Below are positions 29,581 through 63,727 of a stretch of DNA of 64,000 nt, piece after piece (within the stretch, counting starts at the first letter, position 1; the number at the start of each line of letters is the position of its first letter). Made by a program: the position numbers and the translations under genes. The stretch is taken from the IMG/VR virus record IMGVR_UViG_3300035703_000005, positions 184,836 through 248,835 of that record, one strand, 5' to 3'. The notes beneath the pieces are model-generated. The model was not told the DNA's origin, ran no database searches, and was given only the letters and a program-made list of their open reading frames with translations.

Positions 29581-29654
29581 CCTCTCAACATGGCTAAGAT
29601 ACCCCATCTGGCTACCCCATGGCATCATCTGTGGCCAGTTATTAAGCTGTCCAC
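29581..29654 (-). promoter_or_regulatory. early promoter cassette (TATCTT -10, AGCCATGTTGAGAG leader, two-box operator)
   Basis: + strand CCTCTCAACATGGCTAAGATAC ... GTGGCCAG-N8-CTGTCCAC. Confidence 0.75.
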
Positions 29655-29771
29655 TATTCACTCAGTTGTCAAGGTTCTATGGTAGGCTCATGATCCTTTG
29701 TGGCTTGAGCTTTACTTAAGCTTTCTTAAGCGGCTTAAGCACTCAGCCCCTTTATGCACTCCCACAGAGTT

Positions 29772-29801
29772 ATTATAAGCCATTCAGAGGGCTTATGTCA
29801 A
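29772..29801 (-). promoter_or_regulatory. consensus sigma70 promoter (leftward)
   Basis: TTGACA (29801-29796), 18 nt, TATAAT (29777-29772). Confidence 0.75.
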
Positions 29802-29837
29802 GCATGAGGATTAGAGCCCTTAGAGTGCTCATAAGGC

Positions 29838-29879
29838 TGTGGAAAACTTATAGACTTTTTCCACAAGTGTTGTGGAAAA
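29838..29879. promoter_or_regulatory. DnaA-box triplet 1
   Basis: TTTTCCACA at 29838-29846 (-), 29857-29865 (+), 29871-29879 (-). Confidence 0.8.
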
Positions 29880-29947
29880 CTTATAAGAACTGTGAGACCT
29901 TATGTGTAGCAAACTGTGTGGGTTCTGAGATTTATGTCCGGGTGCCA

Positions 29948-29976
29948 TTGACATTTTAGCGGTCGTGTGATAGCCT
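29948..29976 (+). promoter_or_regulatory. sigma70 promoter (rightward, antisense to all genes)
   Basis: TTGACA (29948-29953), 17 nt, TAGCCT (29971-29976) with an extended -10 TG. Confidence 0.7.
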
Positions 29977-29983
29977 GCCCGCT

Positions 29984-30111
29984 AAGATCACAAGGTCTCA
30001 GAGGCTTTTCAAGGGTGCTAACACAAGGTCTCAGAGGGCTTTAAGACTCTAGAAGCACCCTAAACTCACATGGCTTTGCGAAAGAAAGCTTTAACAAAGC
30101 CATGTTTTTTT
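29984..30111 (+). ncRNA. putative ~128-nt small RNA
   Basis: Downstream of the + promoter; AGGGTGCT/AGCACCCT stem; 16-nt direct repeat; ends in an 11-bp hairpin ACATGGCTTTG/CAAAGCCATGT plus T7; no convincing ORF. Confidence 0.6.
30068..30111 (+). terminator. intrinsic terminator
   Basis: 11-bp stem 30068-30078/30095-30105 followed by a run of T to 30111. Confidence 0.75.
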
Positions 30112-30131
30112 AGCCATTTATTTTAAGCCCT

Positions 30132-30165
30132 TTTTCCACAGCTTTTTCCACAGCGTTGTGGAAAA
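30132..30165. promoter_or_regulatory. DnaA-box triplet 2
   Basis: TTTTCCACA at 30132-30140 (+), 30144-30152 (+), 30157-30165 (-). Confidence 0.8.
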
Positions 30166-30250
30166 GCTATCATAACTCATTGTTAGCAACTCTCGGAGCA
30201 CTAGTAGTATGTAACTCCACTCCTCTCTAGGTGTTGTTTCCGTTGAGAGC

Positions 30251-30403
30251 TTAGGGGTCATAACTCTCTAACTCTACAGCCCCTTGAGCATAATCATCAT
30301 AGAACAGCTCATCCTCTGTGTGATTAGCATAGTGATCCATGATCTCTTGCTCAAAGTCAAAGAAGCTTTCTTCCCCGATAGGGTGAGCGTTAGCGATGTT
30401 CAT
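30251..30403 (-). CDS. small acidic early protein
   Basis: Hand-translated 50 aa MNIANAHPIGEESFFDFEQEIMDHY...; ATGA overlap with the upstream gene. Confidence 0.55.
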   Translation of the reverse strand: MNIANAHPIGEESFFDFEQEIMDHYANHTEDELFYDDYAQGAVELESYDP

Positions 30404-30585
30404 TTATTCCTCCTGGTGTTGTATTCTCCGAGATTCTCTACATAAACCTCGTTGACACTTTCGTTACCTTTGAGTTCCAGAAGCTCACGCCAATTCCATT
30501 CCTTTGGACTGACACAATTTGTAGCATCAACTGTGAAGTCAAGAGTAACTCTGTAGCGCGTAACTTTGTCGTTGATTGTTTGCAT
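30400..30585 (-). CDS. small early protein
   Basis: 61 aa, RYRVTLDFTVD...PKEWNWRELL. Confidence 0.6.
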   Translation of the reverse strand: MQTINDKVTRYRVTLDFTVDATNCVSPKEWNWRELLELKGNESVNEVYVENLGEYNTRRNK

Positions 30586-30905
30586 TGTGCGATGTCCTTT
30601 GAGTGTAACAAACTACGTAGCTATTTTATACTGTTTGAGGGTTTAAGTCAACAAAATTGTCATACTTTGACAACACTTCATTGATGACTTGATCTGTGAA
30701 ATAATCCACGATTTCATCATACATGAAGCTAATAGTTTCAGGTGAATAATTGTTCACCCAATTCGCTGAGATAAATGTTACTTCGGCTGATGGCATGATT
30801 CTTGAAAGTATTGTGCATAGCTTGGATTGAAACAACTGTCCCGCCATGTGGCGAAGATCAGTAGAGTCGTGGGAACGATTGCGATAGCAAATAGATGGCG
30901 TTTTT

Positions 30906-31106
30906 TCATGAGTTGTTAATCAGATCTTGTTCAATCTGTTGGAGCATGTTTTCTGTCCAAGCTTGAGGATCTGCGACACCATTGTTTGCGTAGAGTTGAC
31001 TATACCGTAGACCATAAAGATCTGGGTTTAGGTGTTGCAACTCTTCAAGAGTTTGAGCAATCCGAACCTGTAGAATGTAGTCGTCAATCATGATGCAAAA
31101 TGTCAA
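30906..31106 (-). CDS. small early protein
   Basis: 66-aa minus-strand ORF tiling the cassette. Confidence 0.55.
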   Translation of the reverse strand: MTFCIMIDDYILQVRIAQTLEELQHLNPDLYGLRYSQLYANNGVADPQAWTENMLQQIEQDLINNS

Positions 31107-31402
31107 TCATTTTTTGATGGTAAGCATCAGCGAGTTGCACAACATTATGAGATTGAGTAGGATCTTCAATCTCGTATTGTGTCATCTCAAGAGCAAAAAT
31201 GACGGTGGAGAGTAACTCTTGCAACTGTTCAAGCTTTTGAGTTTCAGTCATCATTTGGATTCACCTCTTTGAGAACTTGAGTGAACAATTCAATCGCAGC
31301 TTCGTTGCAGTTGTCTTTCTTCATTCGGTAAATGTAGAACTCCAATGCTTCAGTGATAGCTTCTTGTTTGAGTTCTTCCCAGGTTGGCTTTGTCATGATA
31401 AT

Positions 31403-31606
31403 TCAAGCCAAGATTGCGGACTTCATTTCAACATTGCGGATTTCCATCCGAGCATAATCATACCCCTCAACTTCCGTCAGTTGTTGATAGTATGCTTCAG
31501 CCGTAGAACGACAATCAAACAAGCAGAGAGAATCAAAGCTTTCGCCTTCATAATTCCAACCACCGATCACAGCATAAACTTGCACGAGGTTTGCTCCGTT
31601 GTTCAT
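31403..31606 (-). CDS. small early protein (leaderless)
   Basis: MNNGANLVQVYAVIGGWNYEGESFDSL...; ATG 7 nt after the TATCTT -10. Confidence 0.65.
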   Translation of the reverse strand: MNNGANLVQVYAVIGGWNYEGESFDSLCLFDCRSTAEAYYQQLTEVEGYDYARMEIRNVEMKSAILA

Positions 31607-31671
31607 GTGGCTAAGATACCAGGCCCAGAGTCCCCTCGGCGTGATCAGTGGACAGCCAGTGAACTGGCACA
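31607..31671 (-). promoter_or_regulatory. class A early promoter cassette
   Basis: -10 TATCTT 31618-31613; CGCCGA at -35; GTGGACAG-N8-CTGGCACA 31648-31671. Confidence 0.8.
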
Positions 31672-31680
31672 TTGCTACTC

Positions 31681-31701
31681 AAAAGGGGGCGAAGTGCCCC
31701 C
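31681..31701 (-). terminator. intrinsic terminator between cassettes
   Basis: GGGGGC/GCCCCC stem, TTTT on minus strand, directly upstream of the operator. Confidence 0.65.
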
Positions 31702-31713
31702 TAGTGTGCTCAA

Positions 31714-31881
31714 TCAGAACTCAATCGGTTCAAGAGTTGCTACACCGAGAACGCTCTCAATCATCGGGGATTCGGCATAAGTGTGCCCGACAGAATCAGC
31801 GGCCAGAGTGTCAAGCACTTGCAGCATTTGATTGCCGTTTTGAGCAACGCGAAGCATACCGATTGCGGTTTCTTTGGTCAT
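31714..31881 (-). CDS. small early protein
   Basis: MTKETAIGMLRVAQNGNQMLQVLD... Confidence 0.6.
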   Translation of the reverse strand: MTKETAIGMLRVAQNGNQMLQVLDTLAADSVGHTYAESPMIESVLGVATLEPIEF

Positions 31882-31963
31882 GATAAAAGGAAAAAAGTGT
31901 AGGGCAATTTGAGTGTCTTTAGAGCGCATCTCATTCTCATTCGCTATTCGCAAATGGCGAATG

Positions 31964-32173
31964 TTACTGAACTTCCTCTAGCAAATTGTTCAGGTATTCT
32001 TCATCATAAAGCTCTGCAATCTCTGTTTTAATTTCATCCTCACTCATGCCATCTAGATTGTCACAAATGGTGTCAACAGCAAACTGACACAAATCGCGGA
32101 CATCCATGCCATCAACAACATCAGTGGCATAAAGTTCAATCAGTTTGGAAAGCTGTTCTTTGGAAAGTGTCAT
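31964..32173 (-). CDS. small acidic early protein
   Basis: 69 aa, LIELYATDVVDGMDVRDLCQFA. Confidence 0.65.
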   Translation of the reverse strand: MTLSKEQLSKLIELYATDVVDGMDVRDLCQFAVDTICDNLDGMSEDEIKTEIAELYDEEYLNNLLEEVQ

Positions 32174-32176
32174 GAT

Positions 32177-32347
32177 TCAGATGGTAGCTGGGGACAGGGA
32201 AACTTCAACTCGCTTCAGATTCAATCCAGCAAGTTGCTCATTCACACGCTTGCAGATTGCATCAGTCGGGTTCTTTAGCTTGGACTTCTCATACCAAATG
32301 GTACGGCAGCCGTCGTTGGTTTCTACTTGGATTCGGATGGTTTGCAT
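32177..32347 (-). CDS. small early protein
   Basis: Hand-translated 56 aa MQTIRIQVETNDGCRTIWYEKSK... Confidence 0.55.
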   Translation of the reverse strand: MQTIRIQVETNDGCRTIWYEKSKLKNPTDAICKRVNEQLAGLNLKRVEVSLSPATI

Positions 32348-32371
32348 CACTTTGCGTTGCAGTAGTTAGGA

Positions 32372-32539
32372 TCAGTCAAAAACAACAGGCTTGAAGTCAT
32401 CCGCATAACAATTAGCAAAAGCTGATGCGATGGTGACACAATCAAAGACACCAAGTTGCTCACCGTTGCGAACAGCAACCCACATAGGCTTGCGGGTCTC
32501 AAGATCAGCGCAGGGAAGAAAGTTGGTTGCGTTGGTCAT
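32372..32539 (-). CDS. small early protein
   Basis: First gene after a class A promoter; MTNATNFLPCAD... Confidence 0.6.
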   Translation of the reverse strand: MTNATNFLPCADLETRKPMWVAVRNGEQLGVFDCVTIASAFANCYADDFKPVVFD

Positions 32540-32548
32540 TTGCGTTTG

Positions 32549-32619
32549 TCTCAACATGGCTAAGATACCAGAACTGGCTGGTCGTGGCGCGATCAGTGGA
32601 CAGCCGCTCAACTGTCACA
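32549..32619 (-). promoter_or_regulatory. class A early promoter cassette
   Basis: TCTCAACATGGCTAAGATACC ... GTGGACAG-CCGCTCAA-CTGTCACA. Confidence 0.8.
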
Positions 32620-32800
32620 CTCATAATCATAAGGCACAAGCTCTCTCGGTACGATTAACTGATTGTTGATCGAAAACTCATCCAAAAGATAATCAACTGT
32701 CATCTCCATTTGAGCAGCGTACCACTCAAACATCAGGTAAGTTTCCAATGGAATCTCGTAGCCTTCAGTTTCAACAATGGTGGGTTCTTTAGCCATGATT

Positions 32801-32961
32801 TTACCAGTTAATGAGAGTAGCTGTGTTACCAAGTTTGTTCTGCTCATCCACGATTTCCATAGCATGAACATAAGTTTTGACAGTGACATAACGGGCTTTG
32901 CCTTTAGTCTCAGGGAACAAGCCGAGTCGGTCAATGATGCGAACAGTATTAGAATGTTTCA
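32801..32961 (-). CDS. small early protein
   Basis: MKHSNTVRIIDRLGLFPETKGKARYVTVKTY...; start approximate. Confidence 0.55.
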
Positions 32962-33239
32962 TCTTTGTTTTCCTCAAGAGTGAAATCAGACTCGATACAA
33001 TCATACCAAGTCACCAAATCATAGTCTGGTTCCTGCATCCATTCTTCAGCTTCTTCCTTTGTGTTGAATGTCACAGTAGCAACGTTAGTCTCTTTGATGT
33101 GAACAGTGTAAGACATAATCAGTCAGCTGTGGATTGAATGAAGTTAGCAGTGGAGTGCAGAATGCTCCCCGTAGTGTAGCGAACCTGAGGAAAGATCAGG
33201 AACGCTACAATGAAGATCAGGCCGATTGTTTTCATCGTA

Positions 33240-33566
33240 TCAGTTCAGCCGCATCCCAGAGAAGAAAGGAACAGTCACCGAATTGTTGCGATAATCGGAG
33301 AAAGTTACGAACCATTCGCCTTTCTTTTGAAACACATAGTCACCGTTACCATGCTCTTTGAGAATAGCATTCAGACGGGACTTAGTGGTAGCGGTGCGCC
33401 AGCCACCATCAAACAGTTCAATCCAAGTCTCACCGATACGAGCAATCAAGTTACCGTGCAGGTAGACATCAGCAACATTGGTGCAGCTGACAACCTCAGT
33501 GTTGTCCAGCTTGAAGTCCACACCGTTGGTGATGGCTTTGTTCATTTGCTGTTCGATCTTACGCAT
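33240..33566 (-). CDS. conserved phage early protein
   Basis: 108 aa; VYLHGNLIARI..LFDGGWRTATTKSRLNAIL..VFQKKGEWFV, a motif common in phage early regions. Confidence 0.7.
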   Translation of the reverse strand: MRKIEQQMNKAITNGVDFKLDNTEVVSCTNVADVYLHGNLIARIGETWIELFDGGWRTATTKSRLNAILKEHGNGDYVFQKKGEWFVTFSDYRNNSVTVPFFSGMRLN

Positions 33567-33610
33567 GGTTTGTGAAGCGATTGTTTGGTGGGGGGTCTCG
33601 TTTCCCCCCG

Positions 33611-33677
33611 ATGTGGCTAAGATACCAGGCCCAGAGGCCCCTCGGCGGGATTGGTGGACAGCCCGCAGATTGGCACA
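33611..33677 (-). promoter_or_regulatory. class A early promoter cassette
   Basis: Near-identical to the 31607-31671 copy (ATGTGGCTAAGATACCAGGCCCAGAG..CCCTCGGCG..GTGGACAG). Confidence 0.8.
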
Positions 33678-33848
33678 CAGGCCCCGATTCGGCAGGATCC
33701 GACCCATACCCTGGCTGTCGCAAGTCGGAAGCGGTGAGACTCATTGCAGGCACTAGGGCAGAAACCGGAAAAAGCGTTGATTCTGGCCGCCAGGTAGGTT
33801 GGATCATCCCATGCAGCCAGAATCAGCGGGATCTGAGTTTGTGTTAGT

Positions 33849-34043
33849 TTAGAGTCCAGCTGGTTCGATGCAGTAATAGACTCGATCACCATTTGTGCTC
33901 AGTCCATGCACCCATTGGCCGCCATGTTCGATACAACTTTGGTGGTCAACTTGAATGCTGTGAACATAAAGAATGATGACACCAATGACCAACAAAATGA
34001 TCATCAAGAGTTGAAAGCCTGACACCCAATCATCATTAGTCAT
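33849..34043 (-). CDS. small membrane protein, pilin-like C-x3-GG-x-W family
   Basis: 64 aa; SGFQLLMIILL hydrophobic helix then CIEHGGQWVHG..YYC. Confidence 0.6.
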   Translation of the reverse strand: MTNDDWVSGFQLLMIILLVIGVIILYVHSIQVDHQSCIEHGGQWVHGLSTNGDRVYYCIEPAGL

Positions 34044-34046
34044 GAC

Positions 34047-34250
34047 TCAAGCCTCCTCGTATTCGTAATCATAAACCCGCATCACATCATCCTCAAGAAG
34101 CTTAAGCGTCCGTTCGGTAATCATGTGCGGTTTGATGTCACCTTGCTTGTTGAACAGCTGAGTAACCCAATAGGAGGCAATTTGCTCATCCCGTTCAGCA
34201 ATCTGTTCAAAGCAATCAGCAATCAGAAGCTCAAGATCGTTGTTGTTCAT
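34047..34250 (-). CDS. small early protein
   Basis: 67-aa ORF tiling the cassette. Confidence 0.55.
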   Translation of the reverse strand: MNNNDLELLIADCFEQIAERDEQIASYWVTQLFNKQGDIKPHMITERTLKLLEDDVMRVYDYEYEEA

Positions 34251-34293
34251 TGTAGGAAAAACGGAGGTTTTGATGTAGTAAATGTGGAGCTAA

Positions 34294-34461
34294 TCAGTCG
34301 GAGAAACCATAAAGATCCCAACCAGGCTCTTCCTCTTCAGTTTCATTCCAATACTGATCATACTCACATTCGCTCATAGCGAAGACCTTAGCCATTTCCT
34401 CGCGGTCAGCATCGGAGATCTCAAAGATTTCAGCGGGAAGGTCAACGATTTCGTTGAACAT
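34294..34461 (-). CDS. small acidic early protein
   Basis: MFNEIVDLPAEIFEISD...; GAGGA SD in the repeat leader. Confidence 0.6.
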   Translation of the reverse strand: MFNEIVDLPAEIFEISDADREEMAKVFAMSECEYDQYWNETEEEEPGWDLYGFSD

Positions 34462-34470
34462 TGGTTTGAT

Positions 34471-34544
34471 TCCTCTCAACATGGCTAAGATACAGGGCCC
34501 CAGCCCCCTTTGGCGGGTTTGGTGGACAGCCGCCCAACTGGCCT
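34471..34544 (-). promoter_or_regulatory. class A early promoter cassette
   Basis: TCCTCTCAACATGGCTAAGATAC ... TTGGCG ... GTGGACAG-N8-CTGGCCT. Confidence 0.8.
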
Positions 34545-34705
34545 ACCAACCGCGATTTGATTGCTCAAACAGCTTACGATCTAGGGCCTCTTCATACTCA
34601 TCGGGAGAGAGATAATCCTCCCAGCAACCTCTATCATCATAGCTGCGGTTGGAGTATTCCCAAGAGTAGGATTGGCCTTCATAAAAGTGCAGAACCATGA
34701 TCGTT

Positions 34706-34906
34706 TCAGAGAGTTTGGAAAGGTTGAGCTTCTTTGATGTCGCTGTTGTAATACTTACGGAAGATTGAGTTAATCGTATCGTACCATGGCTCATTGCCAC
34801 TCGGATACCCGCAATCTGCAGCCTGTTGAAGAAACTTAAGGATGCAAGTTTCCTCGTCTTGAGTGAACTTAACTCGGTTCAATGTGTAGCCGGTAGTCAT
34901 AATCAA
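34706..34906 (-). CDS. small early protein
   Basis: 66 aa, YTLNRVKFTQDEETCIL. Confidence 0.55.
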   Translation of the reverse strand: MIMTTGYTLNRVKFTQDEETCILKFLQQAADCGYPSGNEPWYDTINSIFRKYYNSDIKEAQPFQTL

Positions 34907-35181: not shown

Positions 35182-35190
35182 GGGTGTTTG

Positions 35191-35261
35191 TCTCAACATG
35201 GCTAAGATACAGGATCTGGCTGGGTTTGGCGGGATCAGTGGACAGCCCACCAACTGGCACA
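35191..35261 (-). promoter_or_regulatory. class A early promoter cassette
   Basis: TCTCAACATGGCTAAGATAC ... GTGGACAG-CCCACCAA-CTGGCACA. Confidence 0.8.
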
Positions 35262-35264
35262 TTG

Positions 35265-36096: not shown

Positions 36097-36169
36097 CTCT
36101 CAACATGGCCAAGATACCACCGCCAAGGCCCTCTCGGCGGATTTGGTGTGCAGCCCACCGATTGTCACA
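36097..36169 (-). promoter_or_regulatory. class A early promoter cassette
   Basis: CTCTCAACATGGCCAAGATACC ... TCGGCG ... GTGTGCAG-N8-TTGTCACA. Confidence 0.8.
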
Positions 36170-38125: not shown

Positions 38126-38140
38126 GGGAGTTGTGTGTTT

Positions 38141-38213
38141 CTCTCAACATAGCTAAGATACATCGTATCAGCGCCCAGTGGGGGGATTAGTGTGCGGTTC
38201 GCGGATTGGCACA
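38141..38213 (-). promoter_or_regulatory. class A early promoter cassette
   Basis: CTCTCAACATAGCTAAGATAC ... GTGTGCGG-N8-TTGGCACA. Confidence 0.75.
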
Positions 38214-39409: not shown

Positions 39410-39420
39410 GGGGTGGATTC

Positions 39421-39493
39421 CTCTCAACATGGCCAAGATACCCGATCTGAGCCCCCAGTGGCGGGTCTGGTGTCCAGCCCGCCAACTGGCACA
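39421..39493 (-). promoter_or_regulatory. class A early promoter cassette
   Basis: CTCTCAACATGGCCAAGATACC ... GTGGCG ... GTGTCCAG-N8-CTGGCACA. Confidence 0.8.
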
Positions 39494-40004: not shown

Positions 40005-40077
40005 CCTCTCAACATGGCTAGAATACATTGCCTGGCGTCCTCTGGCGAGTCACTAGGCCGGTTCCGGAACTGTCACA
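40005..40077 (-). promoter_or_regulatory. class A early promoter cassette
   Basis: CCTCTCAACATGGCTAGAATAC ... CTGGCG ... CCGGTTCCGGAACTGTCACA. Confidence 0.75.
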
Positions 40078-40774: not shown

Positions 40775-40841
40775 TGAAACTACTATAAGGGGTCACGGTC
40801 GGGTCTGTGGAGGATTTTGTACCAGTTCCGGAACTGTCACA
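40775..40841 (-). promoter_or_regulatory. early promoter cassette
   Basis: -10 TATAGT 40787-40782; box GTACCAGTTCCGGAACTGTCACA 40819-40841. Confidence 0.7.
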
Positions 40842-41744: not shown

Positions 41745-41809
41745 GAGGCCATCATACATGAAAAAAGGGCCCTGTAAAGGGCCCCCGAACCAGTTCGCAA
41801 ACTGTCACA
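41745..41809 (-). promoter_or_regulatory. early promoter cassette with stem-loop
   Basis: -10 TATGAT 41756-41751; GGGCCC-N6-GGGCCC hairpin; box ACCAGTTCGCAAACTGTCACA. Confidence 0.7.
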
Positions 41810-44052: not shown

Positions 44053-44121
44053 CAACATGGCTAACTTAATGCGTCAAGCAGTGGATTTGTGGATTTGGTG
44101 GACGGTTTGGGCTTTGTCACA
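44053..44121 (-). promoter_or_regulatory. class A early promoter cassette (variant)
   Basis: AACATGGCTAACTTA ... GTGGACGG-N8-TTGTCACA. Confidence 0.7.
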
Positions 44122-45692: not shown

Positions 45693-45696
45693 TGCG

Positions 45697-45766
45697 TTTC
45701 AACATAGCTAGAATACCCCTTACCCGTGGCCAGGGCAAGGGGCTGAACGATCAGAGATCCTTATGA
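45697..45766 (-). promoter_or_regulatory. sigma70 promoter with GATC-rich upstream element
   Basis: TTGCCC-17-TATTCT; upstream + strand CTGAACGATCAGAGATCCTTATGA. Confidence 0.7.
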
Positions 45767-50805: not shown

Positions 50806-50868
50806 TGGCTAGTATGATGCACCAGAGGGGTCTGTGGCGTCCTCAGTGGACAGTTCAGAAAGTGTCCA
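50806..50868 (-). promoter_or_regulatory. early promoter cassette, class B box orientation
   Basis: -10 CATACT; GTGGCG at -35; + strand GTGGACAGTTCAGAAAGTGTCCA. Confidence 0.7.
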
Positions 50869-53250: not shown

Positions 53251-53312
53251 GAGTATTATAGGGTAAAAAGGGCACCAATGGAGATGCCCTTGTGCCAGTT
53301 CTTCAAGTGTCC
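53251..53312 (-). promoter_or_regulatory. class B early promoter cassette with stem-loop
   Basis: TATAAT; AAGGGCA/TGCCCTT hairpin; + strand GTGCCAGTTCTTCAAGTGTCC. Confidence 0.8.
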
Positions 53313-56937: not shown

Positions 56938-56998
56938 GAGTATTATAAGGCATCCACAGGGTTTATGGAGTGTCCTTGTGCCAGTTCTTCAAGTGTCC
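56938..56998 (-). promoter_or_regulatory. class B early promoter cassette
   Basis: GAGTATTATA ... GTGCCAGTTCTTCAAGTGTCC. Confidence 0.8.
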
Positions 56999-57921: not shown

Positions 57922-57942
57922 TTGGAGTTCCTTTGTCTATGA

Positions 57943-58003
57943 GAGTATTATAAGGCAAAAAGGGGTCTTGTGGAGACCCCCTGTGCCAGTTCTTCAAGTG
58001 TCA
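57943..58003 (-). promoter_or_regulatory. class B early promoter cassette with stem-loop
   Basis: TATAAT; GGGGTCT/AGACCCC hairpin; TGTGCCAGTTCTTCAAGTGTCA. Confidence 0.8.
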
Positions 58004-58188: not shown

Positions 58189-58315
58189 TTAGTTTTTACA
58201 CCTCTTCTTCTATCGTGTTCGGCAACTCTTGCCTTATCAACATTTCTACCCCAAATATCATATCTTTGTGTTTGAATGAACTTTTTGTTCCTTTCATCTT
58301 TCTTTTCAAATCTGT

Positions 58316-58507
58316 TCATTTCAATTCCTCAATAAGTTCATCACGCATTTGTTTGAGATTGTCTCCTGCCCAAATGTCAAGAGTTTTGTCGGCAAGTTTA
58401 ACTGCTTCCCAAAGTTTAGGATAGTTCCTCCAATCTACTACATCCTCATCAAGAGCAATCAGCAACTCAAGAATACAGAGTTTATGAAGTTTAAGAAAAT
58501 CAGTCAT
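58316..58507 (-). CDS. small early protein
   Basis: MTDFLKLHKLCILELL; first gene after the promoter. Confidence 0.6.
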   Translation of the reverse strand: MTDFLKLHKLCILELLIALDEDVVDWRNYPKLWEAVKLADKTLDIWAGDNLKQMRDELIEELK

Positions 58508-58524
58508 CGGTTTGATGTGTATGA

Positions 58525-58585
58525 GAGTATCATACCACTCCCAGAACCCCACAGAGCATCCCCTGTGCCAGTTTAGAAAGTGTCC
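58525..58585 (-). promoter_or_regulatory. class B early promoter cassette
   Basis: TATGAT; TGTGCCAGTTTAGAAAGTGTCC. Confidence 0.75.
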
Positions 58586-60007
58586 TCACCGAAGTTCCTA
58601 TAAATCACATCCATCCATATCTTATCAAAATATTTCCTGTCTTCATCAGTAATCATATTTGCTCTCATATACTCTTCAAGGGTGATTTTATTATCATCCA
58701 AGTATTTTTGGAGTTCTTCAATTGTTAACATAAACCTCAAAAAATATTTTTGTTCCACCCATAAGCATAACATCGTGTTCTATACTCACACTTCCTACCT
58801 TTGCTTTTCCTTGTTTGATTTTATCTGCGACTTGTAGAAAAGTTTTCTCCGTATCGTGAATATCGTGAGTTAGAAAATTTGATGCCTTTGTAATACCTGT
58901 GGTTGATGTTGCTACTGATGGACTTGTAAGATTGGATGCGACTGATGTGTTTGAACTCCATTTTTTGAATGCTTCATCAACTTCTGATACTGTTCGTTCA
59001 AACTCATCTGCTTTTATGACTTTTGGTTTTTCTTTCTTTCCGTAGAGTTCTTCATATTTTTGTATTAGTGGATTGGAACTACTCATAATTATCACACTCC
59101 AAAATAATATCACAACCTTCGTTTCGTAAGTTCAACGACCATACAGATTTTACCACATTGGATAGATTATTACCAACACTCATCCACACCTCACAATCCT
59201 CACCATACTCATTTGTATCAGGAAGAACACTCAAGATTTCTTTGAGTTGCCGAATGGTGAGTGCGTCAGTTGTGAATGGTTGGTTTCTTATATCAGTCAT
59301 TTCTTACACCGATGTAATGGAACACGAAGAAACTGAAAAAACCTTCCAATATATCCTATCTGTGCTCCACATTTTTGACAACAATACGATGGGTAGGTCA
59401 TCCTTCAACATCTCCACTCACTACAATAGGTTCTACATCACCACAGACAACTTCTGCTTTCATTTGTTCCATAATAATAGACACCTTATCCATAACTCTT
59501 TCTCTGGTTTCTTGTGTCCAAATACTATTTCCCACAACATTTAAACTTTTATAGAGAGTGTTATGAATTACCATAAGGTCTGCTGCTGATAGTTTAGTCA
59601 TTTTTCTACCTTTCGTGGGTCTTTACCTTTATGCCAAATAGTATGAAGTTCATCAACACGATTTTCCCAAATCATAGTATCTACAATGTATTCATATGGG
59701 TTTTCATAAGTATCTTCATACACTTCTCTAATGAAGATAGATTTATTTACCGATTGGGGGTATTTCATTTCTCATATTCCCCTAATTTATAAAATGCTCT
59801 AAAACCTTTAGCAAGAGCACCTTCTGGTAAGTCCCGATAATCTGGGTCATAATATTGAACCATTCCCAAAATTGCGGTTGCTGTTTCTACTGGGTCTGGG
59901 ATTTCTCCACTCCATTTTACAAGAGACCCACCATCTCCACCAATATGTTCTAAAAGATGAACCATTACTTTTTCCCAAGAATTATTAGGCAAATCACTGA
60001 ACTTCAT
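58573..60007 (-). other. run of small early genes (58573-~58731, 58718-59086, 59079-59300, 59398-59601, 59765-60007)
   Basis: Tiling minus-strand ORFs. Confidence 0.6.
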
Positions 60008-60026
60008 AGGGTTTCTTTGTATATAA

Positions 60027-60088
60027 GAGTATTATACACCAAAGGGCACCAGATTTCAAGTGCCCGTGTTCCAGTTTGGTAAGTGCCC
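60027..60088 (-). promoter_or_regulatory. class B early promoter cassette with stem-loop
   Basis: TATAAT 60036-60031; GGGCAC/GTGCCC hairpin; GTTCCAGTTTGGTAAGTGCCC. Confidence 0.75.
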
Positions 60089-60867
60089 TATGCTATTCTG
60101 CGTCTATTACTCTTGGATGTATCTATTCCTTTTCCTTTTTGATAAGAAACTACACCAGCAGCAGTTGATACATAACCAGTTATACAACATTCCCATCTTT
60201 GTGCGTTTATAATCTTTGAAGAAATAGCACCACCTTTTTTAGCATTTTCTACCAACTGCTCTGTTGTTAGTGCGAATATACCGACCTTATTTTCTTTATT
60301 TTTAGCAGAAACCTTCTTTCCATTTTCACTTCTTTGTTCGGCAGACAATCCAAAAAGTCCAGTTCCATTTTTCCTATTTACTTCTGCTGCCTTTTTACCA
60401 TTTTCTCTTCTTTCTTCTGTTGTTTGTGCGAATATAGCAGTTTTATTTTTCATATTATTGTGTGCTATTTTCTTACCATTTTCACTCATTTGTTCTTTTG
60501 TTAGAGTGAATATTCCTAAACCAAGTTCTCTATTTCTTTTACCAATTCTCTTACCAGTTTTCCTTCTAATAGAAAGAGAAACTTTTCCCCCACAACTTTC
60601 ATTCAAGCACCATTTATCAGTATTATAAACAGGTCTAATCAATCTTGTTTCAACTTCTTGTGCTTCTATCCAACCTTCATCACTAAACTGAAAGAGTTGA
60701 AGTATCTGCTTCTTTGGAGTATAAAGTTCCCAACACCATTTATGAGTTACTGGAGAACCACAATAATCTTCGTTGAAGTATTTTTCCTTATGAACCCCAT
60801 AGTAGTAATAGGGCACTTCTTCAAAGGTAATTTTATACAAGTATATTCTTGGACTTTGTGAAGTCAT
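60088..60867 (-). mobile_element. free-standing GIY-YIG (Seg-like) homing endonuclease gene
   Basis: IYLYKITF..YYYGVH..YCGS N-terminal nuclease pattern; four ~25-aa repeats (e.g. GIFTLTKEQMSENGKK); own late promoter. Confidence 0.8.
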
Positions 60868-60883
60868 AGTTCTGCTTCTAAAT

Positions 60884-60956
60884 TGTGTTCGCAATACTAT
60901 TTATACAAGAAAAGGTGCCCGAAGACACCTTTTCCACTCTTATGGATGCGAACACA
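60884..60956 (-). promoter_or_regulatory. late promoter TATAAATA embedded in a double hairpin
   Basis: TATAAATA 60905-60898; outer arms 60884-60893/60947-60956; inner arms 60910-60917/60926-60933. Confidence 0.75.
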
Positions 60957-60967
60957 TTAGAGCATTA

Positions 60968-61495
60968 TTATTTATCATCAATCCACTTGAACCCTAAAAG
61001 TTTATCAGCACAAAATCTAATCAAAAAATTCGGTTTATAAGGCATATAAAACCTCAAATAACCATTACCGATTGTATAATAACCTTTGTGTTTATTTCCT
61101 TGTTTAATTATAAAACCGGAAGTAAAATTATTTGTTCCAAGAGAAGTGCTATAAGTTAGTATAGATTTTTGTGGAAATTGTCCGTTCTTCTTCGCATACT
61201 CAAAGTCCTCAATAATTCTATCAAACTTTCGATTGTAATAATACTCTTGATGACATTTGAGTTGTGCGAACTTGTATTCTACATCCTCAATTAGTTTATC
61301 AATCTTCTCATCAAACTCTTGTGAGATTTCTTCTAATGACTTGGGTGGTTCTGGAATATCAAGATAAGGTTTGATTACATCAAAATACTCATAATTTTCT
61401 GTGTAATAAAAAGCACCACAAACATAAGGAAGAATACTTTGAGGTGCTTTTTTGAGTTTCTTTGGGTTGAGTTTGTATCCTATTTTTTCAGTCAT
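60968..61495 (-). CDS. hypothetical early protein
   Basis: 175 aa; MTEKIGYKLNPKKL...KPNFLIRFCADKLLGFKWID. Confidence 0.6.
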   Translation of the reverse strand: MTEKIGYKLNPKKLKKAPQSILPYVCGAFYYTENYEYFDVIKPYLDIPEPPKSLEEISQEFDEKIDKLIEDVEYKFAQLKCHQEYYYNRKFDRIIEDFEYAKKNGQFPQKSILTYSTSLGTNNFTSGFIIKQGNKHKGYYTIGNGYLRFYMPYKPNFLIRFCADKLLGFKWIDDK

Positions 61496-62354
61496 TTGTA
61501 ATCTTCAATATAATTTTGATAGTCAAAATCTGCCTTATCAAACTTCAAAGGTTCTGGAACATAAGGAATAGTAAAATACTTTTTGAGAAGTTCATACTGT
61601 TCGTTAGTTTCACTCGAATTAGCAACCAAGTTCATACACTCAAAGACATTTCGCACATCTTCAAGAGTTTGAATTTTACTTACATCAAGTTTGTGATTTA
61701 ATCTTTCAGTCATTTTTTTCTATCCATAAGGTATTCAAGTAGTCCCAAAAACATAGAACCTCCCATATAAACAAGCATAACAATCATAAGAAACTCAATC
61801 ATCTTTCAAATACTCCTCATCAATCAGAATAATAGTATCAAAAGGTTGTTCGCATCCCAATACACAATAAGAACCAAACTTATTCATCAAGTCCCACATT
61901 ACAAACTCACAGTATCCATTTTCATCTTCCTTTGGTGGAGTATAAGGAAACTTATCCAATTTACCGTGAGAGTTCCAAAAATCTTCCCAGAGTTTCTTAT
62001 GAAGTTCTTTACCGAACTTTGTAAGTTTGACTTTGACTGGGTAGTTGATGTTAAAGGATTTCATTACCACTCCAACTCCACATAAATGCACCACCCCAAA
62101 TAATCGGGAAGATTATCTTTCAGGTATTCTACCATATATTCCTGCAATTCGTAAACAGTTGGAGAGCATTCATCAATCGTAATACCATACAACAAATCCT
62201 CATCGTGAATACTATACTTCACCCATACATCAGAAACTCTCACACTGGCATAATTTACACCAGCAAATCTTTCTGTGGAGTTCTTGTGAAGTTCAAGTGC
62301 TTTTGTGGCAACCTCTTGAATTTGGAATAGATTATCTTTGATGGTGTCGTTCAT
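61492..62354 (-). other. small early genes (61492-61713, 61795-62064, 62064-62354)
   Basis: Tiling minus-strand ORFs; TAGAAT -10 at 62394-62389. Confidence 0.6.
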
Positions 62355-62487
62355 TTGTGATGATAATCCCAAATCTGTTGTTCCACCAATTCTAACACAT
62401 CAGGGGGCACATAGGAAGTATCTGTGGTTTTTGGAAGTTTTGCGACTTCCTCACAGATAAGTTCCAGTTCCATTAGGGTATAGTCAA

Positions 62488-62844
62488 TCATTTGAGGTTC
62501 TCTTTTAGATATTGAAGACAATCATTCCATCCTTGATTATATCCCATCTCATCTTCTTCATATTCTAACTCATCAGGCAACCATTTGGCAAAAATATTAC
62601 AGATGCCTTCAGCACCAACAATACCAAAAGAATTGAAATACTCAAGAAGTGTCTGTGGTTTTGGTTCTTCTACTCGTTGATACTTTACACCACCGATTTC
62701 AATAATGTCAGGGAGTTGTTGATTAGTCATTTGTGATTTCCTATAAAGACAATATTCTGGTTCAAAACATCCACCTTGAGTTGCGTTGGTTTCTACATCT
62801 ACTGGTGCATAACAGAACCCACAATCCCAGTATTTACATTTCAT
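62488..62844 (-). CDS. early protein, N-terminal Cys motif plus WLP-x-E family domain
   Basis: CKYWDCGFCY..CFEPEYC; GGVKYQRVEEPK..KWLPDE..GWNDCLQYLK. Confidence 0.65.
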   Translation of the reverse strand: MKCKYWDCGFCYAPVDVETNATQGGCFEPEYCLYRKSQMTNQQLPDIIEIGGVKYQRVEEPKPQTLLEYFNSFGIVGAEGICNIFAKWLPDELEYEEDEMGYNQGWNDCLQYLKENLK

Positions 62845-63283
62845 TTTGTCCCATCACAATAGATATGAGGATAACTGTCAGGATAACTTGCAGGTGGTTT
62901 TGAGATTACGGGAGAAACACAAGGAATTGTTTGAGAAGGAGTGAGGGGAGTATAAGGAGAACCAATATACATGCTATATGGAGATTTACTCAAATACTCT
63001 TCAATAATATTACAAGACCATCCATCCTCATAGAATTGCTTACCATAGAAAACAGCATCTTCCTTATTTGGAAAGGAAGCAACATAAGTGTCGTTGTGAT
63101 AGAGTGAATAAACTTTCATAATCAATCAGTAGTTTTAGAAGAACTAAAAGTCGTGTGAAGCAAAACGGCAAGAAATAAAAACCATCCCCAACCAGCAATT
63201 CCGTGAAAAGCAAGAATAATTGCTCCAATCACACAGGCAATAGAAGACAGATTAGCAAGAAGTAGAATAAGTGCGTGGTTCAT
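62841..63283 (-). other. two small genes (62841-63125; 63122-63283 membrane peptide)
   Basis: Tiling ORFs; the second is hydrophobic with GWGWFLF. Confidence 0.6.
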
Positions 63284-63300
63284 CGGTTTTATGTTTGTAA

Positions 63301-63362
63301 GGTTATTATACGACAAAGGGCACCTGATTTCAAGTTCCCTTGTGACGGTTCTTCAAGTGTCC
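63301..63362 (-). promoter_or_regulatory. class B early promoter cassette with stem-loop
   Basis: TATAAT; AAGGGCAC/GTTCCCTT; GTGACGGTTCTTCAAGTGTCC. Confidence 0.8.
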
Positions 63363-63646
63363 TTACCAAACTCCTTTTTGAGTTGTTCATATTGTTTACG
63401 ACGATTTTCTTTTTGTTGCTCTTCTTGTTTCACTCTCTTTTCATACTCTTCATCATTTTCAAGACGGGTTTTGTAGACATAGTAGTCTTTTCCTCCATTC
63501 CCATAATCATAATCATAATCAATACCTTCCCAACCCTCTTTTTTGCACCTTTGGAGTGTGGAAATGATTTTGTCTATTGAACCATAAAACTCACCATAGT
63601 AACAAAAATCTTTGCTTTCTTTGATTGTAATGCGTTCAGCAGTCAT
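63353..63646 (-). CDS. small early protein
   Basis: 97 aa; RLENDEEYEKRVKQEE..RRKQYEQLKKEFG. Confidence 0.65.
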   Translation of the reverse strand: MTAERITIKESKDFCYYGEFYGSIDKIISTLQRCKKEGWEGIDYDYDYGNGGKDYYVYKTRLENDEEYEKRVKQEEQQKENRRKQYEQLKKEFGKDT

Positions 63647-63666
63647 CAGTCCTCTGTGTGTATAGA

Positions 63667-63727
63667 AGTATTATACGACAAAAGGCACCTGATTTCAAGT
63701 GCCCTTGTGCCAATTTAGTAAGTGTCC
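63667..63727 (-). promoter_or_regulatory. class B early promoter cassette with stem-loop
   Basis: Near-identical to the 63301 and 60027 copies (GGCACCTGATTTCAAGTGCCC; GTGCCAATTTAGTAAGTGTCC). Confidence 0.8.

What the first reader, a model, noticed from the sequence alone, without database searches (positions are those of the whole stretch)
29581..63727. About 21 repeated operator-promoter cassettes partition the early region into shufflable modules
Seen: nearly every block of 1-6 small genes begins with the same architecture: a quasi-palindromic box (GGACAS-N8-CTGKCACA) about 29-32 nt upstream of a -10, often a hairpin over the -35 region, and a conserved leader. Some copies are nearly identical over ~60 nt (31607 vs 33611; 60027 vs 63301 vs 63667). 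Terminators sit just upstream of some boxes (31681). Established: PeSL (promoter-early stem-loop) repeats in T4-type phages mediate modular gene shuffling, and upstream early-gene motifs are known in cyanomyoviruses. Inference: an integron-like cassette array driven by homologous recombination between promoter repeats and co-regulated by one factor.
Basis: partly seen in the sequence, partly recalled or inferred. Interest (0 to 1): 0.7.

Follow-up and report, generated by a model that had tools for sequence, protein, structure and literature searches.

The report
Cyanophage early-promoter cassette arrays
About 21 copies of a composite promoter (a 22-base quasi-palindromic box, a variable spacer that is often a terminator hairpin, and a -10 element) head the small early genes of a freshwater T4-like cyanophage. 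This is very probably the early-gene promoter already reported for cyanomyoviruses, and the copies are one kind of gene-shuffling breakpoint among several.

Summary
I found 17 strict and 4 degenerate box-plus-minus-10 sites on the coding (-) strand between 29.6 and 63.7 kb, against 0-1 in shuffles.

The sites form two families. Family A (29.6-40 kb, GC-rich island) has a weak TATCTT -10. Family B (53-64 kb) has a TATAAT -10 and usually a terminator-like hairpin where a -35 would sit. The box is inverted between the families but occupies the same place, 29-31 nt upstream of the -10.

The box is common in viral contigs (scans stopped at about 120 stretches). It occurs in Syn9, S-PM2 and S-SRM01 and is absent from T4 and RB49. 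It is essentially absent from prokaryote genomes, including picocyanobacteria-sized ones.

The best reading is that these are early promoters of cyanomyoviruses that depend on an unidentified box-binding factor and double as transcription-unit insulators.

The shuffling idea is only partly supported. Metagenomic variants include module gains and losses bounded by cassettes. Just as many single-gene indels sit at tight gene junctions, gene order is scrambled at almost every junction, and the S-PM2d laboratory deletion breaks inside coding sequence. There is no integrase, so "integron-like" is not justified.

The parts
63670..63727 (-). Family B cassette. Box 63706-63727; spacer hairpin with TTGAAA in the loop, followed by a T-run; -10 TATAAT at 63670-63675; ATG at 63646.
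63305..63362 (-). Family B cassette. Box 63341-63362; imperfect hairpin; -10 TATAAT at 63305-63310; ATG at 63283.
60031..60088 (-). Family B cassette. Box 60067-60088; terminator-like hairpin 60044-60065; -10 TATAAT at 60031-60036; ATG at 60007.
58529..58585 (-). Family B cassette. Box 58564-58585; weak spacer structure; -10 TATGAT at 58529-58534; ATG at 58507.
57947..58003 (-). Family B cassette. Box 57982-58003; terminator-like hairpin 57960-57982 with a T-run; -10 TATAAT at 57947-57952.
56942..56998 (-). Family B cassette. Box 56977-56998; no terminator-like hairpin; -10 TATAAT at 56942-56947; ATG at 56918.
53255..53312 (-). Family B cassette. Box 53291-53312; hairpin with a T-run; -10 TATAAT at 53255-53260; ATG at 53229.
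50811..50867 (-). Degenerate cassette. Box 50846-50867 (4 mismatches); weak -10; ATG at 50787.
44063..44121 (-). Degenerate A-type cassette. Box 44100-44121; TAAGTT in the -10 position; family A leader; ATG at 44058.
41751..41809 (-). Hybrid cassette. Near-palindromic box 41786-41809; strong terminator-like hairpin with a T-run; -10 TATGAT; drives the DUF6267 gene at 40845-41744.
40782..40841 (-). Hybrid cassette. Almost perfect 24-bp palindrome at 40818-40841 (1 mismatch to TGTGNCAGTT-N4-AACTGNCACA); -10 TATAGT; ATG at 40755.
40020..40077 (-). Family A cassette. Box 40056-40077; -10 TATTCT; family A leader.
39435..39493 (-). Family A cassette. Box 39472-39493; -10 TATCTT at 39435-39440.
38155..38213 (-). 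Family A cassette with a degenerate box at 38192-38213; -10 TATCTT; ATG at 38125.
36111..36169 (-). Family A cassette with a degenerate box at 36148-36169; spacer hairpin (MFE -17); -10 TATCTT; ATG at 36096.
35204..35261 (-). Family A cassette. Box 35240-35261 (0 mismatches); -10 TATCTT at 35204-35209.
34487..34545 (-). Family A cassette. Box 34524-34545; -10 TATCTT at 34487-34492.
33619..33677 (-). Family A cassette. Box 33656-33677; -10 TATCTT; drives a Kyano_Gp96-family gene.
32562..32619 (-). Family A cassette. Box 32598-32619; -10 TATCTT at 32562-32567.
31613..31671 (-). Family A cassette. Box 31650-31671 (0 mismatches); -10 TATCTT at 31613-31618.
29596..29655 (-). Family A -10 and leader, preceded by an atypical box that reads in the B orientation and carries an insertion.
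31681..31701 (-). Intrinsic-terminator-like hairpin (GGGGGC / GCCCCC plus TTTT), 9 nt upstream of the box of the 31.6 kb cassette.
45693..45759 (-). Box-less host-like promoter (TTGCCC ... TATTCT). It shares the upstream 24-mer GATCTCTGATCGnTCAGCCCCTTG with 48640-48663. Similar box-less TTGACT/TTGACA sites lie at 48614-48643, 46256-46285 and 42529-42581.
60898..60933 (-). T4-type late promoter motif TATAAATA (60898-60905), just downstream of a terminator-like hairpin (60910-60933). It interrupts the early array upstream of the 259-aa gene.

Best explanation
The cassettes are the early promoters of this T4-like cyanophage.

**Anatomy.** Each cassette has four parts:
- a 22-24 bp quasi-palindromic box, ideal form TGTGnCAGTT-N4-AACTGnCACA, lying at about -64 to -43 with its pseudo-dyad near -53;
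- a 29-31 nt spacer of free sequence that carries no conserved -35;
- a -10 hexamer;
- a short conserved leader before the ATG.

**Inferred mechanism.** The host sigma-A RNA polymerase reads the -10. A dimeric DNA-binding factor on the box, still unidentified, supplies what a -35 would otherwise supply, in the manner of a class I activator. The box works in either orientation: family A, as in Syn9, has the TGTGCCAGTT half distal to the gene, and family B, as in S-PM2 and S-SRM01, has it proximal.

**Terminator role.** In family B the free spacer has been used for an intrinsic terminator. One cassette therefore ends the upstream unit and starts the next, so each block of 1-6 genes is an insulated transcription unit.

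**Origin of the two families.** They reflect two evolutionary sources. The family A array lies in a GC-rich island with marine-phage affinities. The family B array is shared with freshwater phages.

**Recombination.** As a by-product, the dispersed repeats are occasional substrates for recombination that adds or removes whole modules. They are not the main boundary of gene shuffling.

**Shown versus inferred.** Shown: the anatomy, fixed spacing, orientation classes, phage specificity, hairpin excess and cassette-bounded variants. Inferred: promoter activity, early timing and the existence of a box-binding activator.
For: - **Count and position.** 21 copies against 1 or fewer by chance, all just upstream of ORFs on the coding strand.
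- **Spacing in viral contigs, B orientation.** Of 142 instances of the exact B-type box, 118 have a 5/6-or-better TATAAT downstream, and 107 of those sit 29-30 nt from the box.
- **Spacing in viral contigs, A orientation.** 72 of 78 instances with a -10-like hexamer have it 28-30 nt after the 24-mer.
- **Conservation profile.** Between box and -10 the sequence is unconserved, and no -35 emerges in logos built from 105 B and 77 A instances.
- **Phage specificity.**
  - Only 7 stretches matched in 185,579 prokaryote genomes, none picocyanobacterial.
  - T4 and RB49 have none; Syn9, S-PM2 and this genome have 4-6; the reversed control gives 0.
- **Syn9.** The box and a -10 lie upstream of gp55, gp63, gp68 and the gp75 helicase, all in the A orientation at 43-49 kb.
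- **Lineage-specific orientation.** Syn9 hits are all in the A orientation. In S-PM2 and S-SRM01 most hits to the B pattern are in the B orientation (8 of 11 and 17 of 19), and their hits to the A pattern lie on the strand opposite the local genes. This genome has both.
- **Palindromic intermediates.** Near-perfect palindromes at 40.8 and 41.8 kb show that the box is a dyad.
- **Spacer hairpins in family B.** Mean MFE is -9.5 against -4.6 in shuffles; 65% are at or below -8; 38 of 105 have a T-rich tail.
- **Elsewhere in the genome.** The same cassette precedes an AAA_5/CbbQ-like ATPase gene followed by the gp45 clamp, and a PD-(D/E)XK nuclease gene. These are replication-type functions.
- **Gene content.** The array holds small ORFs of unknown function, an S-AdoMet-lyase-like protein and a helicase, which is typical early content.
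- **Literature, from my own knowledge.** The abstract of Doron et al. 2016 (ISME J 10:1437) reports a novel regulatory element that controls early genes of Syn9 and is abundant in T4-like cyanophages. The paper is not held.
Against: - **No transcript ends.** The only RNA run that holds the region is kept as contigs and showed no 5' end pile-ups (section 6).
- **No candidate factor.** None of the 111 ORFs in the region has a recognisable DNA-binding domain. The strict box and its palindromic form are essentially absent from genomes of picocyanobacterial size, so there is no evidence for a host regulon of the same factor.
- **Unusual position.** A site centred near -53 is not a classical CRP (cAMP receptor protein) position (-41.5 or -61.5).
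- **Asymmetry.** The two half-sites differ consistently (GGACAC against TGTGCCAG). This is not what a simple homodimer site predicts.
- **Families differ beyond orientation.** Family A has weak -10 hexamers and a C-rich tract after the box. Family B has consensus TATAAT. The two families may not work identically.
- **Published motif not compared.** I could not compare the box with the published Syn9 motif logo.
Confidence: 0.6

Rival explanations
1. The repeats exist chiefly as recombination sites: a PeSL-like or integron-like system in which homologous exchange between cassettes excises and inserts gene modules, and promoter function comes along with it.
For: **Cassette-bounded variants in metagenome contigs.**
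- Three joints lose the module between two cassettes: 57973/58562, 58524/60031 and 31620/32601.
- Two joints 'go back' and have the topology expected of a circle or tandem duplication: 60036/58552 and 34493/33644.
- Three joints sit at the distal edge of a box: 56754/56999, 58002/58728 and 58002/58602.

**Enrichment of joint endpoints (my count).**
- In the family B stretch about 17 of 54 listed endpoints fall in cassettes, which cover 6% of the sequence.
- In the family A stretch about 8 of 46 fall in cassettes, which cover 10%.

**Distant relatives.**
- The same upstream gene end is joined through a box to four different downstream genes, and the reverse also occurs.
- Adjacency is never conserved across a cassette (0/157).

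**Precedent.** PeSLs in RB49/phi1, T4/PST and KVP40/nt-1 (PMC2839356, PMC4122927).
Against: - Single-gene indels and rearrangements at tight junctions without cassettes are at least as frequent in the same data.
- Adjacency is also lost at 91% of tight junctions. The difference in the junction-pair test is only about 16% against 28%.
- Most broken pairs are replacements rather than clean module indels.
- In the cassette-to-cassette joints the spacer letters differ from both window cassettes. They show a variant genome with one cassette at that place, not a fresh crossover (section 5c).
- Copies share at most 26 nt of exact identity.
- The S-PM2d deletion breaks within coding sequence.
- No integrase or recombinase is present.
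- The strict 29-31 nt phasing of box and -10 is explained by transcription, not by recombination.
Confidence: 0.2
2. The box is an operator for a repressor, for example a phage product that shuts early transcription off. The -10, together with cryptic -35-like sequences in the spacer (TTGAAA in three family B copies), forms a self-sufficient sigma-70 promoter.
For: - Three family B copies score 11/12 as TTGAAA-17-TATAAT promoters.
- Family B has a consensus TATAAT in 85 of 105 instances.
- Palindromic boxes are typical of repressor operators.
Against: - The box ends at about -43 and does not overlap the -35 or -10 positions. It would not occlude polymerase.
- Most spacers have no -35-like hexamer.
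- Family A has poor -10 hexamers (TATCTT, CATACT, TATTGT) and no -35. Such promoters are unlikely to fire unaided.
- No repressor-like protein is encoded nearby.
Confidence: 0.12
3. The conserved elements act at the RNA level. The box and hairpin would form the 3' end of the upstream transcript (terminator, stability or processing signal), and their proximity to the -10 would be incidental.
For: - In family B the box lies just 5' of a terminator-like hairpin, so it is transcribed as the 3' UTR of the upstream unit.
- No Rfam family matches, so an undescribed RNA motif cannot be excluded on that ground.
Against: - The box occurs in both orientations at the same distance from the -10. An RNA signal would not tolerate that.
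- The distance to the -10 is constrained to within 1 nt, while the hairpin is optional: it is absent in 2 of 7 window copies and in about a third of the viral-contig copies.
- In family A the putative stem between the box interior and downstream sequence is no more frequent than in cross-instance controls (0.26 against 0.23).
Confidence: 0.05

Closest known systems
Early-gene regulatory element of T4-like cyanophages (Syn9, P-TIM40; Doron et al. 2016, ISME J 10:1437). Cited from memory of the abstract; the paper is not held.
   Same: - It is a phage-specific upstream element, not a host-like -35, and it heads early genes.
- It is abundant and conserved among T4-like cyanophages in genomes and metagenomes.
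- I found the same box plus a -10 upstream of Syn9 gp55, gp63, gp68 and gp75, in S-PM2 and S-SRM01, and in more than 200 viral-contig stretches.
- Box-less host-like promoters also occur in the window, as that paper reports for middle genes.
   Different: - I could not compare sequence logos, so identity with the published motif is inferred and not shown.
- This genome carries the box in both orientations, in two separate arrays.
- Family B embeds a terminator hairpin between box and -10.
- I do not know whether either feature has been described.
PeSLs, promoter-early stem-loops of RB49/phi1, T4/PST and KVP40/nt-1 (Arbiol et al. 2010, PMC2839356; Comeau et al. 2014, PMC4122927)
   Same: - Both are composite promoter-plus-terminator cassettes of about 60-90 bp with a conserved leader.
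- Both are repeated between small ORFs of unknown function in a hyperplastic region.
- Both are found at some indel boundaries between relatives.
- Both have GGGG...CCCC-type stems.
   Different: - PeSLs have a sigma-70 -35 and -10, with the stem-loop upstream of the -35.
- Here there is no conserved -35, the stem-loop occupies the -35 position, and an extra 22-bp box lies upstream of it.
- The box is absent from T4 and RB49.
- Mini-circles have not been shown here.
- Cassettes are not the dominant breakpoint.
- Puxty et al. 2015 (PMC4503421) judged PeSL-mediated exchange unlikely for S-PM2.
Activator-dependent promoters that lack a -35 (CRP class I; cyanobacterial NtcA-type promoters). From established knowledge.
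   Same: - A -10-only promoter.
- A palindromic site at a fixed, helically phased distance upstream.
- The site tolerates inversion.
   Different: - The centre lies near -53, rather than at -41.5 or -61.5.
- The half-sites are 10 bp long, giving a 24-bp site.
- No factor is known.
- No matching regulon was found in picocyanobacteria-sized genomes.
T4 MotA-dependent middle promoters. From established knowledge.
   Same: A phage-specific box replaces the -35 and works together with a host-type -10.
   Different: - The MotA box is asymmetric and centred at -30.
- It needs the phage proteins MotA and AsiA, which cyanomyoviruses lack (PMC2984593).
- Here the box is a dyad at about -53.
Integron gene-cassette arrays. 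From established knowledge.
   Same: A co-directional array of small genes separated by a repeated imperfect-palindrome element.
   Different: - There is no integrase.
- There is no attI/attC structure.
- Each cassette carries its own promoter, whereas an integron has a single Pc promoter.
- The repeats lie upstream of the genes, not downstream.

Membership tests
Cyanomyovirus early-gene promoter element | Conserved phage-specific motif upstream of a -10, at a fixed distance, in front of early-region genes | tested here: met
   21 copies in the window with 29-31 nt spacing. The same architecture holds in 118 of 142 B-orientation and 78 of 96 A-orientation viral-contig instances.
Cyanomyovirus early-gene promoter element | Present in the reference phage Syn9 upstream of its early-type genes and widespread in cyanomyoviruses | tested here: met
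   Found in Syn9 upstream of gp55, gp63, gp68 and gp75. S-PM2 has 11 and S-SRM01 has 19 sites, with 0 in the reversed control. Absent from T4 and RB49.
Cyanomyovirus early-gene promoter element | Sequence identity with the published motif logo | not testable with these tools
   The paper is not in the held library. No citing paper that I could read gives the motif.
Cyanomyovirus early-gene promoter element | Transcription start sites a few nt downstream of the -10, and early expression kinetics | not testable with these tools
   Only metatranscriptome contigs at low depth were available, with no end pile-ups.
PeSL (promoter-early stem-loop) | Strong sigma-70-like promoter with both -35 and -10 | tested here: not met
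   The -10 is present, but no conserved -35 appears in logos of 105 B and 77 A instances. Only 3 window copies have TTGAAA-17-TATAAT.
PeSL (promoter-early stem-loop) | Adjacent stem-loop that can act as a terminator | tested here: met
   Met for family B: spacer MFE -9.5 against -4.6 in shuffles, and 38 of 105 are terminator-like. Five of 7 window copies have a hairpin plus T-run. The stem-loop sits downstream of the box and in place of the -35, not upstream of the promoter.
PeSL (promoter-early stem-loop) | Concentrated in hyperplastic regions among small genes of unknown function | tested here: met
   23 of 27 genome-wide copies lie in one stretch of about 36 kb made of small ORFs, including the two just past the window end.
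PeSL (promoter-early stem-loop) | Indel and replacement breakpoints between close relatives fall preferentially in the elements | tested here: inconclusive
   Several variants are bounded by cassettes, and joint endpoints are enriched about 2-5 fold. Many indels lie at tight junctions. Only a modest difference appears. The S-PM2d deletion is not at cassettes.
PeSL (promoter-early stem-loop) | Formation of mini-circles by recombination between neighbouring elements | not testable with these tools
   Two 'goes back' joints (60036/58552, 34493/33644) have circle or duplication topology. They come from metagenome contigs and could equally be other gene orders.
Integron | Tyrosine-recombinase integrase with attI, and attC sites at the 3' ends of cassettes | tested here: not met
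   No integrase or recombinase domain in 111 ORFs by Pfam or PHROGs. The repeats lie 5' of the genes and carry promoters.
Class I activator-dependent promoter | Dyad-symmetric site at a fixed helical phase upstream of a -10-only core promoter | tested here: met
   Dyad TGTGnCAGTT-N4-AACTGnCACA, with 1 mismatch at 40818-40841. Spacing holds within 1 nt. Both orientations are used.
Class I activator-dependent promoter | An identified DNA-binding activator | tested here: not met
   No DNA-binding domain is encoded in the region. No host regulon was detected in picocyanobacteria-sized genomes.

The most novel reading that the evidence does not exclude
The box is the site of a dedicated factor that has not been identified. 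It could be a virion-delivered phage protein or a host protein with very few chromosomal sites.

- The factor would activate -10-only promoters from about -53 in either orientation. It would define a cyanomyovirus-specific early-transcription system unrelated to T4's Alt/Mod/MotA logic.
- The same portable box-terminator-promoter unit would let early genes move between marine and freshwater phage lineages while staying correctly expressed and insulated.
- This genome would be a natural chimera that carries both the 'marine' (A) and the 'freshwater' (B) versions.
Probability: 0.25. Interest if true: 0.65.

Novelty: new member of a known kind. Interest (0 to 1): 0.4.

Why it matters
- **Open question.** Early transcription in T4-like cyanophages, among the most abundant viruses in the sea and in lakes, does not follow the T4 paradigm. 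The factor that reads their early-gene element is unknown.
- **What this genome offers.** It is a compact natural experiment with 21 copies in two orientations and two -10 strengths, with or without an embedded terminator. It also holds near-perfect palindromic intermediates. Together these constrain models (a dyad site, phased at about -53, orientation-independent) and give ready-made probes for pull-downs.
- **Calibration of the PeSL idea for cyanophages.** Promoter repeats are used as module boundaries, but most gene turnover in these regions happens at ordinary gene junctions.
- **Annotation.** The box is a simple marker of early transcription units in uncultured cyanophage contigs.

Tried and rejected
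- **Rfam.** No family matches anywhere in the window.
- **Family A stem.** I tested a stem between the box interior (GGCGGG) and the downstream CCCGCC. Across 78 independent instances it is no more frequent than in cross-instance controls (0.26 against 0.23), so I dropped it as a general feature.
- **Sigma-54 promoter.** The box contains TGGCAC, but there is no TTGC at the right distance, a -10 lies 30 nt downstream, and cyanobacteria lack sigma-54 (established knowledge).
- **Host-regulon mimicry.**
  - The strict box gave 7 chance-level hits in 185,579 genomes, none cyanobacterial hosts.
  - The relaxed palindrome is about 4 times over the reversed control in cyanobacteria generally, but almost all hits are in large genomes and not at promoter-like spacing.
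- **Local regulator.** Pfam and PHROGs scans of 111 ORFs found no DNA-binding domain.
- **Clean module-indel signature.** Of the sampled broken junction pairs, 344 of 405 were replacements or unresolved.
- **S-PM2d deletion.** As a test of cassette-mediated deletion it was negative.
- **Literature.** Searches for the motif sequence itself returned only unrelated papers. The key paper is not held.
- **RNA evidence.** The one metatranscriptome that holds the region is kept as contigs and gave no usable 5' ends.

Full report
**Context.** The window is the last 64 kb of a 248,835-bp viral record, rated 100% complete and drawn from a metagenome. Its DNA matches only Synechococcus myoviruses, and only in patches, so it is a T4-like cyanophage. 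Public runs that hold it are freshwater, lake and subsurface metagenomes. From 28 to 64 kb essentially all genes are small, tightly packed and on the - strand.

- A joint scan asked for the box in either orientation, with up to 4 of 18 specified bases wrong, plus a TAnnnT hexamer 27-33 nt downstream. It gives 17 distinct - strand sites, against 0-1 in shuffles.
- Profile searches add four degenerate copies. The total is 21.
- All copies sit in intergenic gaps just upstream of an ORF.
- Six more copies exist elsewhere in the genome. Two of them (genome 1510 and 2047) continue the array across the arbitrary start of the circular map.

**There are two families, not one**. All sequences below are read on the coding strand.
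- *Family A* has 10 copies between 29.6 and 40.1 kb.
  - Its layout is TGTGCCAGTT-N6-CTGTCC(AC), then about 30 nt, then TATCTT and the leader AGCCATGTTGAGA.
- *Family B* has 7 copies between 53.3 and 63.7 kb.
  - Its layout is GGACACTT-N4-AACTGGCACA, then 29-30 nt, then TATAAT and the leader ACTCTyATACACA.
- The 22-mer is the same element turned round. It occupies the same position relative to the -10 in both families.
- Copies at 40.8 and 41.8 kb are nearly perfect 24-bp palindromes. The one at 40818-40841 has 1 mismatch to TGTGNCAGTT-N4-AACTGNCACA. This shows the underlying dyad.
- Copies are 57-83% identical over 81 nt and share at most 26 nt exactly.

**Spacer and terminators.**
- In family B the spacer folds: window MFE (minimum folding energy) values are -10 to -16, and five of seven copies have a G+C stem followed by a T-run.
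- Across 105 independent viral-contig instances the spacer MFE averages -9.5 against -4.6 for shuffles. 38 of them have a T-rich tail.
- Stem sequences differ between instances while pairing is kept.
- The hairpin lies where a -35 would be, and three window copies carry TTGAAA in the loop.
- In family A a separate terminator precedes one box (31681-31701).
- An apparent stem between the box interior and the sequence after it is not supported outside this genome.

**Distribution.**
- The B pattern has only 7 stretches in 185,579 prokaryote genomes, none in picocyanobacteria.
- Of 142 B-pattern instances, 118 have a good TATAAT, nearly always 29-30 nt downstream. Most of the rest are A-orientation promoters read backwards.
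- A-orientation instances have diverse, weak -10 hexamers 28-30 nt after the 24-mer.
- Logos show no conserved -35 in either class.
- In isolates, Syn9 has the A orientation upstream of gp55, gp63, gp68 and the gp75 helicase.
- S-PM2 and S-SRM01 use mainly the B orientation.
- T4 and RB49 have none, and reversed-pattern controls are zero.
- From my own knowledge of its abstract, Doron et al. 2016 reported a novel regulatory element that controls early genes in Syn9 and is abundant in T4-like cyanophages, while host-like promoters drive middle genes.
- That paper is not held, so I infer but cannot show that the box is that element.
- Box-less TTGACT-N17-TATTCT promoters and a TATAAATA late motif also occur in the window. 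This fits the three-class scheme.

**How it most likely works.**
- The tight phasing of box and -10, the free spacer, the missing -35, the dyad symmetry and use in either orientation all point to a DNA-level site for a dimeric factor. The factor would help host polymerase at -10-only promoters. The pseudo-dyad lies near -53 if transcription starts 7 nt after the -10.
- No factor is identified. No DNA-binding domain is found in 111 local ORFs.
- The palindrome is not a feature of genomes of picocyanobacterial size.
- In family B the cassette also terminates the upstream unit, so each block of 1-6 genes is insulated.
- Elsewhere in the genome the same cassette precedes an AAA_5/CbbQ-like ATPase with the gp45 clamp, and a PD-(D/E)XK nuclease. 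This is consistent with pre-replicative expression.
- Promoter activity and early timing remain inferred. No transcript ends could be obtained.

**Two origins.**
- Family A lies in a GC-rich island (0.43 against 0.36 for the family B array and 0.32 for the first 26 kb).
- Its -10 and leader match marine phages S-8S53 and S-CAM9.
- One segment is 89% identical to phage DSL-LC02.
- Family B matches freshwater or estuarine phages S-SRM01, B3 and B23, and also the S-PM2 'ORFanage' region.
- In the probable source run X1, region A is present at 94% of words, as single clean contigs at a depth of about 55.
- In the same run, region B is present at 41% of words, in many variant contigs with summed depths of several hundred.
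- B-type genes are therefore shared by many co-occurring phages.

**Shuffling.**
- *Distant relatives* (about 240 viral-contig stretches).
  - Homology to the window comes in single-gene pieces whose ends coincide with gene ends, whether or not a cassette is there.
  - Gene adjacency is conserved in 0/157 cases across cassettes, 43/491 across tight junctions and 4/158 across other gaps.
  - In a pairwise junction test the downstream neighbour is kept in about 16% of cases at cassettes and about 28% at tight junctions.
  - Most breaks are replacements.
- *Close relatives* (metagenome contigs laid on two 5.9-kb stretches).
  - Several variants are bounded by cassettes on both sides, in register. 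Three lose the intervening module and two have circle or duplication topology.
  - Others end exactly at the distal edge of a box.
  - Cassette-bounded variants are outnumbered by indels elsewhere, many of them single-gene indels at tight junctions.
  - Cassettes share no 31-mer, so these joints are not assembly chimeras.
  - The spacer letters in the joints differ from both window cassettes. They therefore document variant genomes, not fresh crossovers.
- *S-PM2d.* The 9,541-bp spontaneous deletion joins codon 5 of p017 to the interior of p050 with 1-2 nt of microhomology, away from the boxes.
- *Net.* Cassettes are used as module boundaries, as in the PeSL model. They are a minority route, and 'integron-like' is not warranted.

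**Verdict.** The feature is real, abundant and clearly functional. It is best filed as another and unusually instructive instance of the cyanomyovirus early promoter, with PeSL-like terminator-promoter organisation. The orientation duality, the embedded terminator and the absence from host genomes are the points worth following up.

Noticed in passing
window 28000-46300: This is a compositional island. GC is 0.40-0.47 (mean 0.43), against 0.28-0.35 in the first 26 kb and 0.36 at 53-64 kb. It coincides with the family A array. Window 37900-39410 is 89% identical to Synechococcus phage DSL-LC02. The block looks horizontally acquired from a GC-richer cyanophage lineage.
   Followed up: partly
window 29591, 32557, 34482, 35199, 39430, 40015 (ATG inside the family A leader): The conserved family A leader has an ATG only 4 nt after the -10 hexamer (TATCTT-AGCC-ATG). 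In 6 of 8 window copies, and in most viral-contig copies with this leader, it is in frame with the next ATG 18-21 nt downstream, with no stop between. That next ATG has a GAGG-like Shine-Dalgarno sequence. This could be a leaderless start or a short N-terminal extension.
   Followed up: partly
window 48640-48663 and 45736-45759: The 24-mer GATCTCTGATCGnTCAGCCCCTTG is repeated upstream of two box-less sigma-70-like promoters. Similar TTGACT/TTGACA-type promoters lie at 46256-46285 and 42529-42581. These may be the 'host-like' middle-class promoters.
   Followed up: no
window 60898-60933: A T4-type late promoter motif, TATAAATA, lies directly after a terminator hairpin inside the otherwise early array. 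It sits upstream of a 259-aa ORF (60088-60867) with no Pfam match.
   Followed up: no
L001 / AJ630128 (S-PM2) 5078, 8575, 9855, 11349, 20118, 22931; L265, L266: The S-PM2 'ORFanage' region carries several B-orientation boxes, more promoter cassettes than Puxty et al. 2015 noted. Even so, the S-PM2d spontaneous 9,541-bp deletion (5798 to 15339) breaks inside the coding sequences of p017 and p050.
   Followed up: yes
G001-G401 (cyanobacterial genomes), e.g. L253, L254, L257, L260: The relaxed palindrome TGTGNCAGTT-N4-AACTGNCACA (up to 2 mismatches) occurs in 98 of 401 cyanobacterial genomes, against about 25 for the reversed control. Almost all hits are in large genomes. Some sites recur across genomes; for example TGTGACAGTAAATTATCTGGCACA is found in six. 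A host transcription-factor family with a similar operator may exist outside picocyanobacteria.
   Followed up: partly
window 30900-36800 versus 56500-62400 in run X1: In the probable source metagenome, region A is covered by clean single contigs at a depth of about 55. Region B is covered by many divergent short contigs with summed depths of 400-1300. The family B genes belong to a gene pool shared by many co-occurring phages.
   Followed up: partly
window 36334-36891, 40845-41759, 44447-45553, 33240-33590, 37271-37663: These are the few recognisable products in the array: an S-AdoMet-lyase-like protein (below the Pfam cut-off), DUF6267, a DEAD/ResIII helicase, Kyano_Gp96 and DUF7717.
   Followed up: partly
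L011 1699-1803; L154, L178, L210: Some viral contigs carry two boxes in tandem 82 nt apart, or a full box followed 10 nt later by an extra AACTGGCACA half-site. These could be arrays of binding sites.
   Followed up: no
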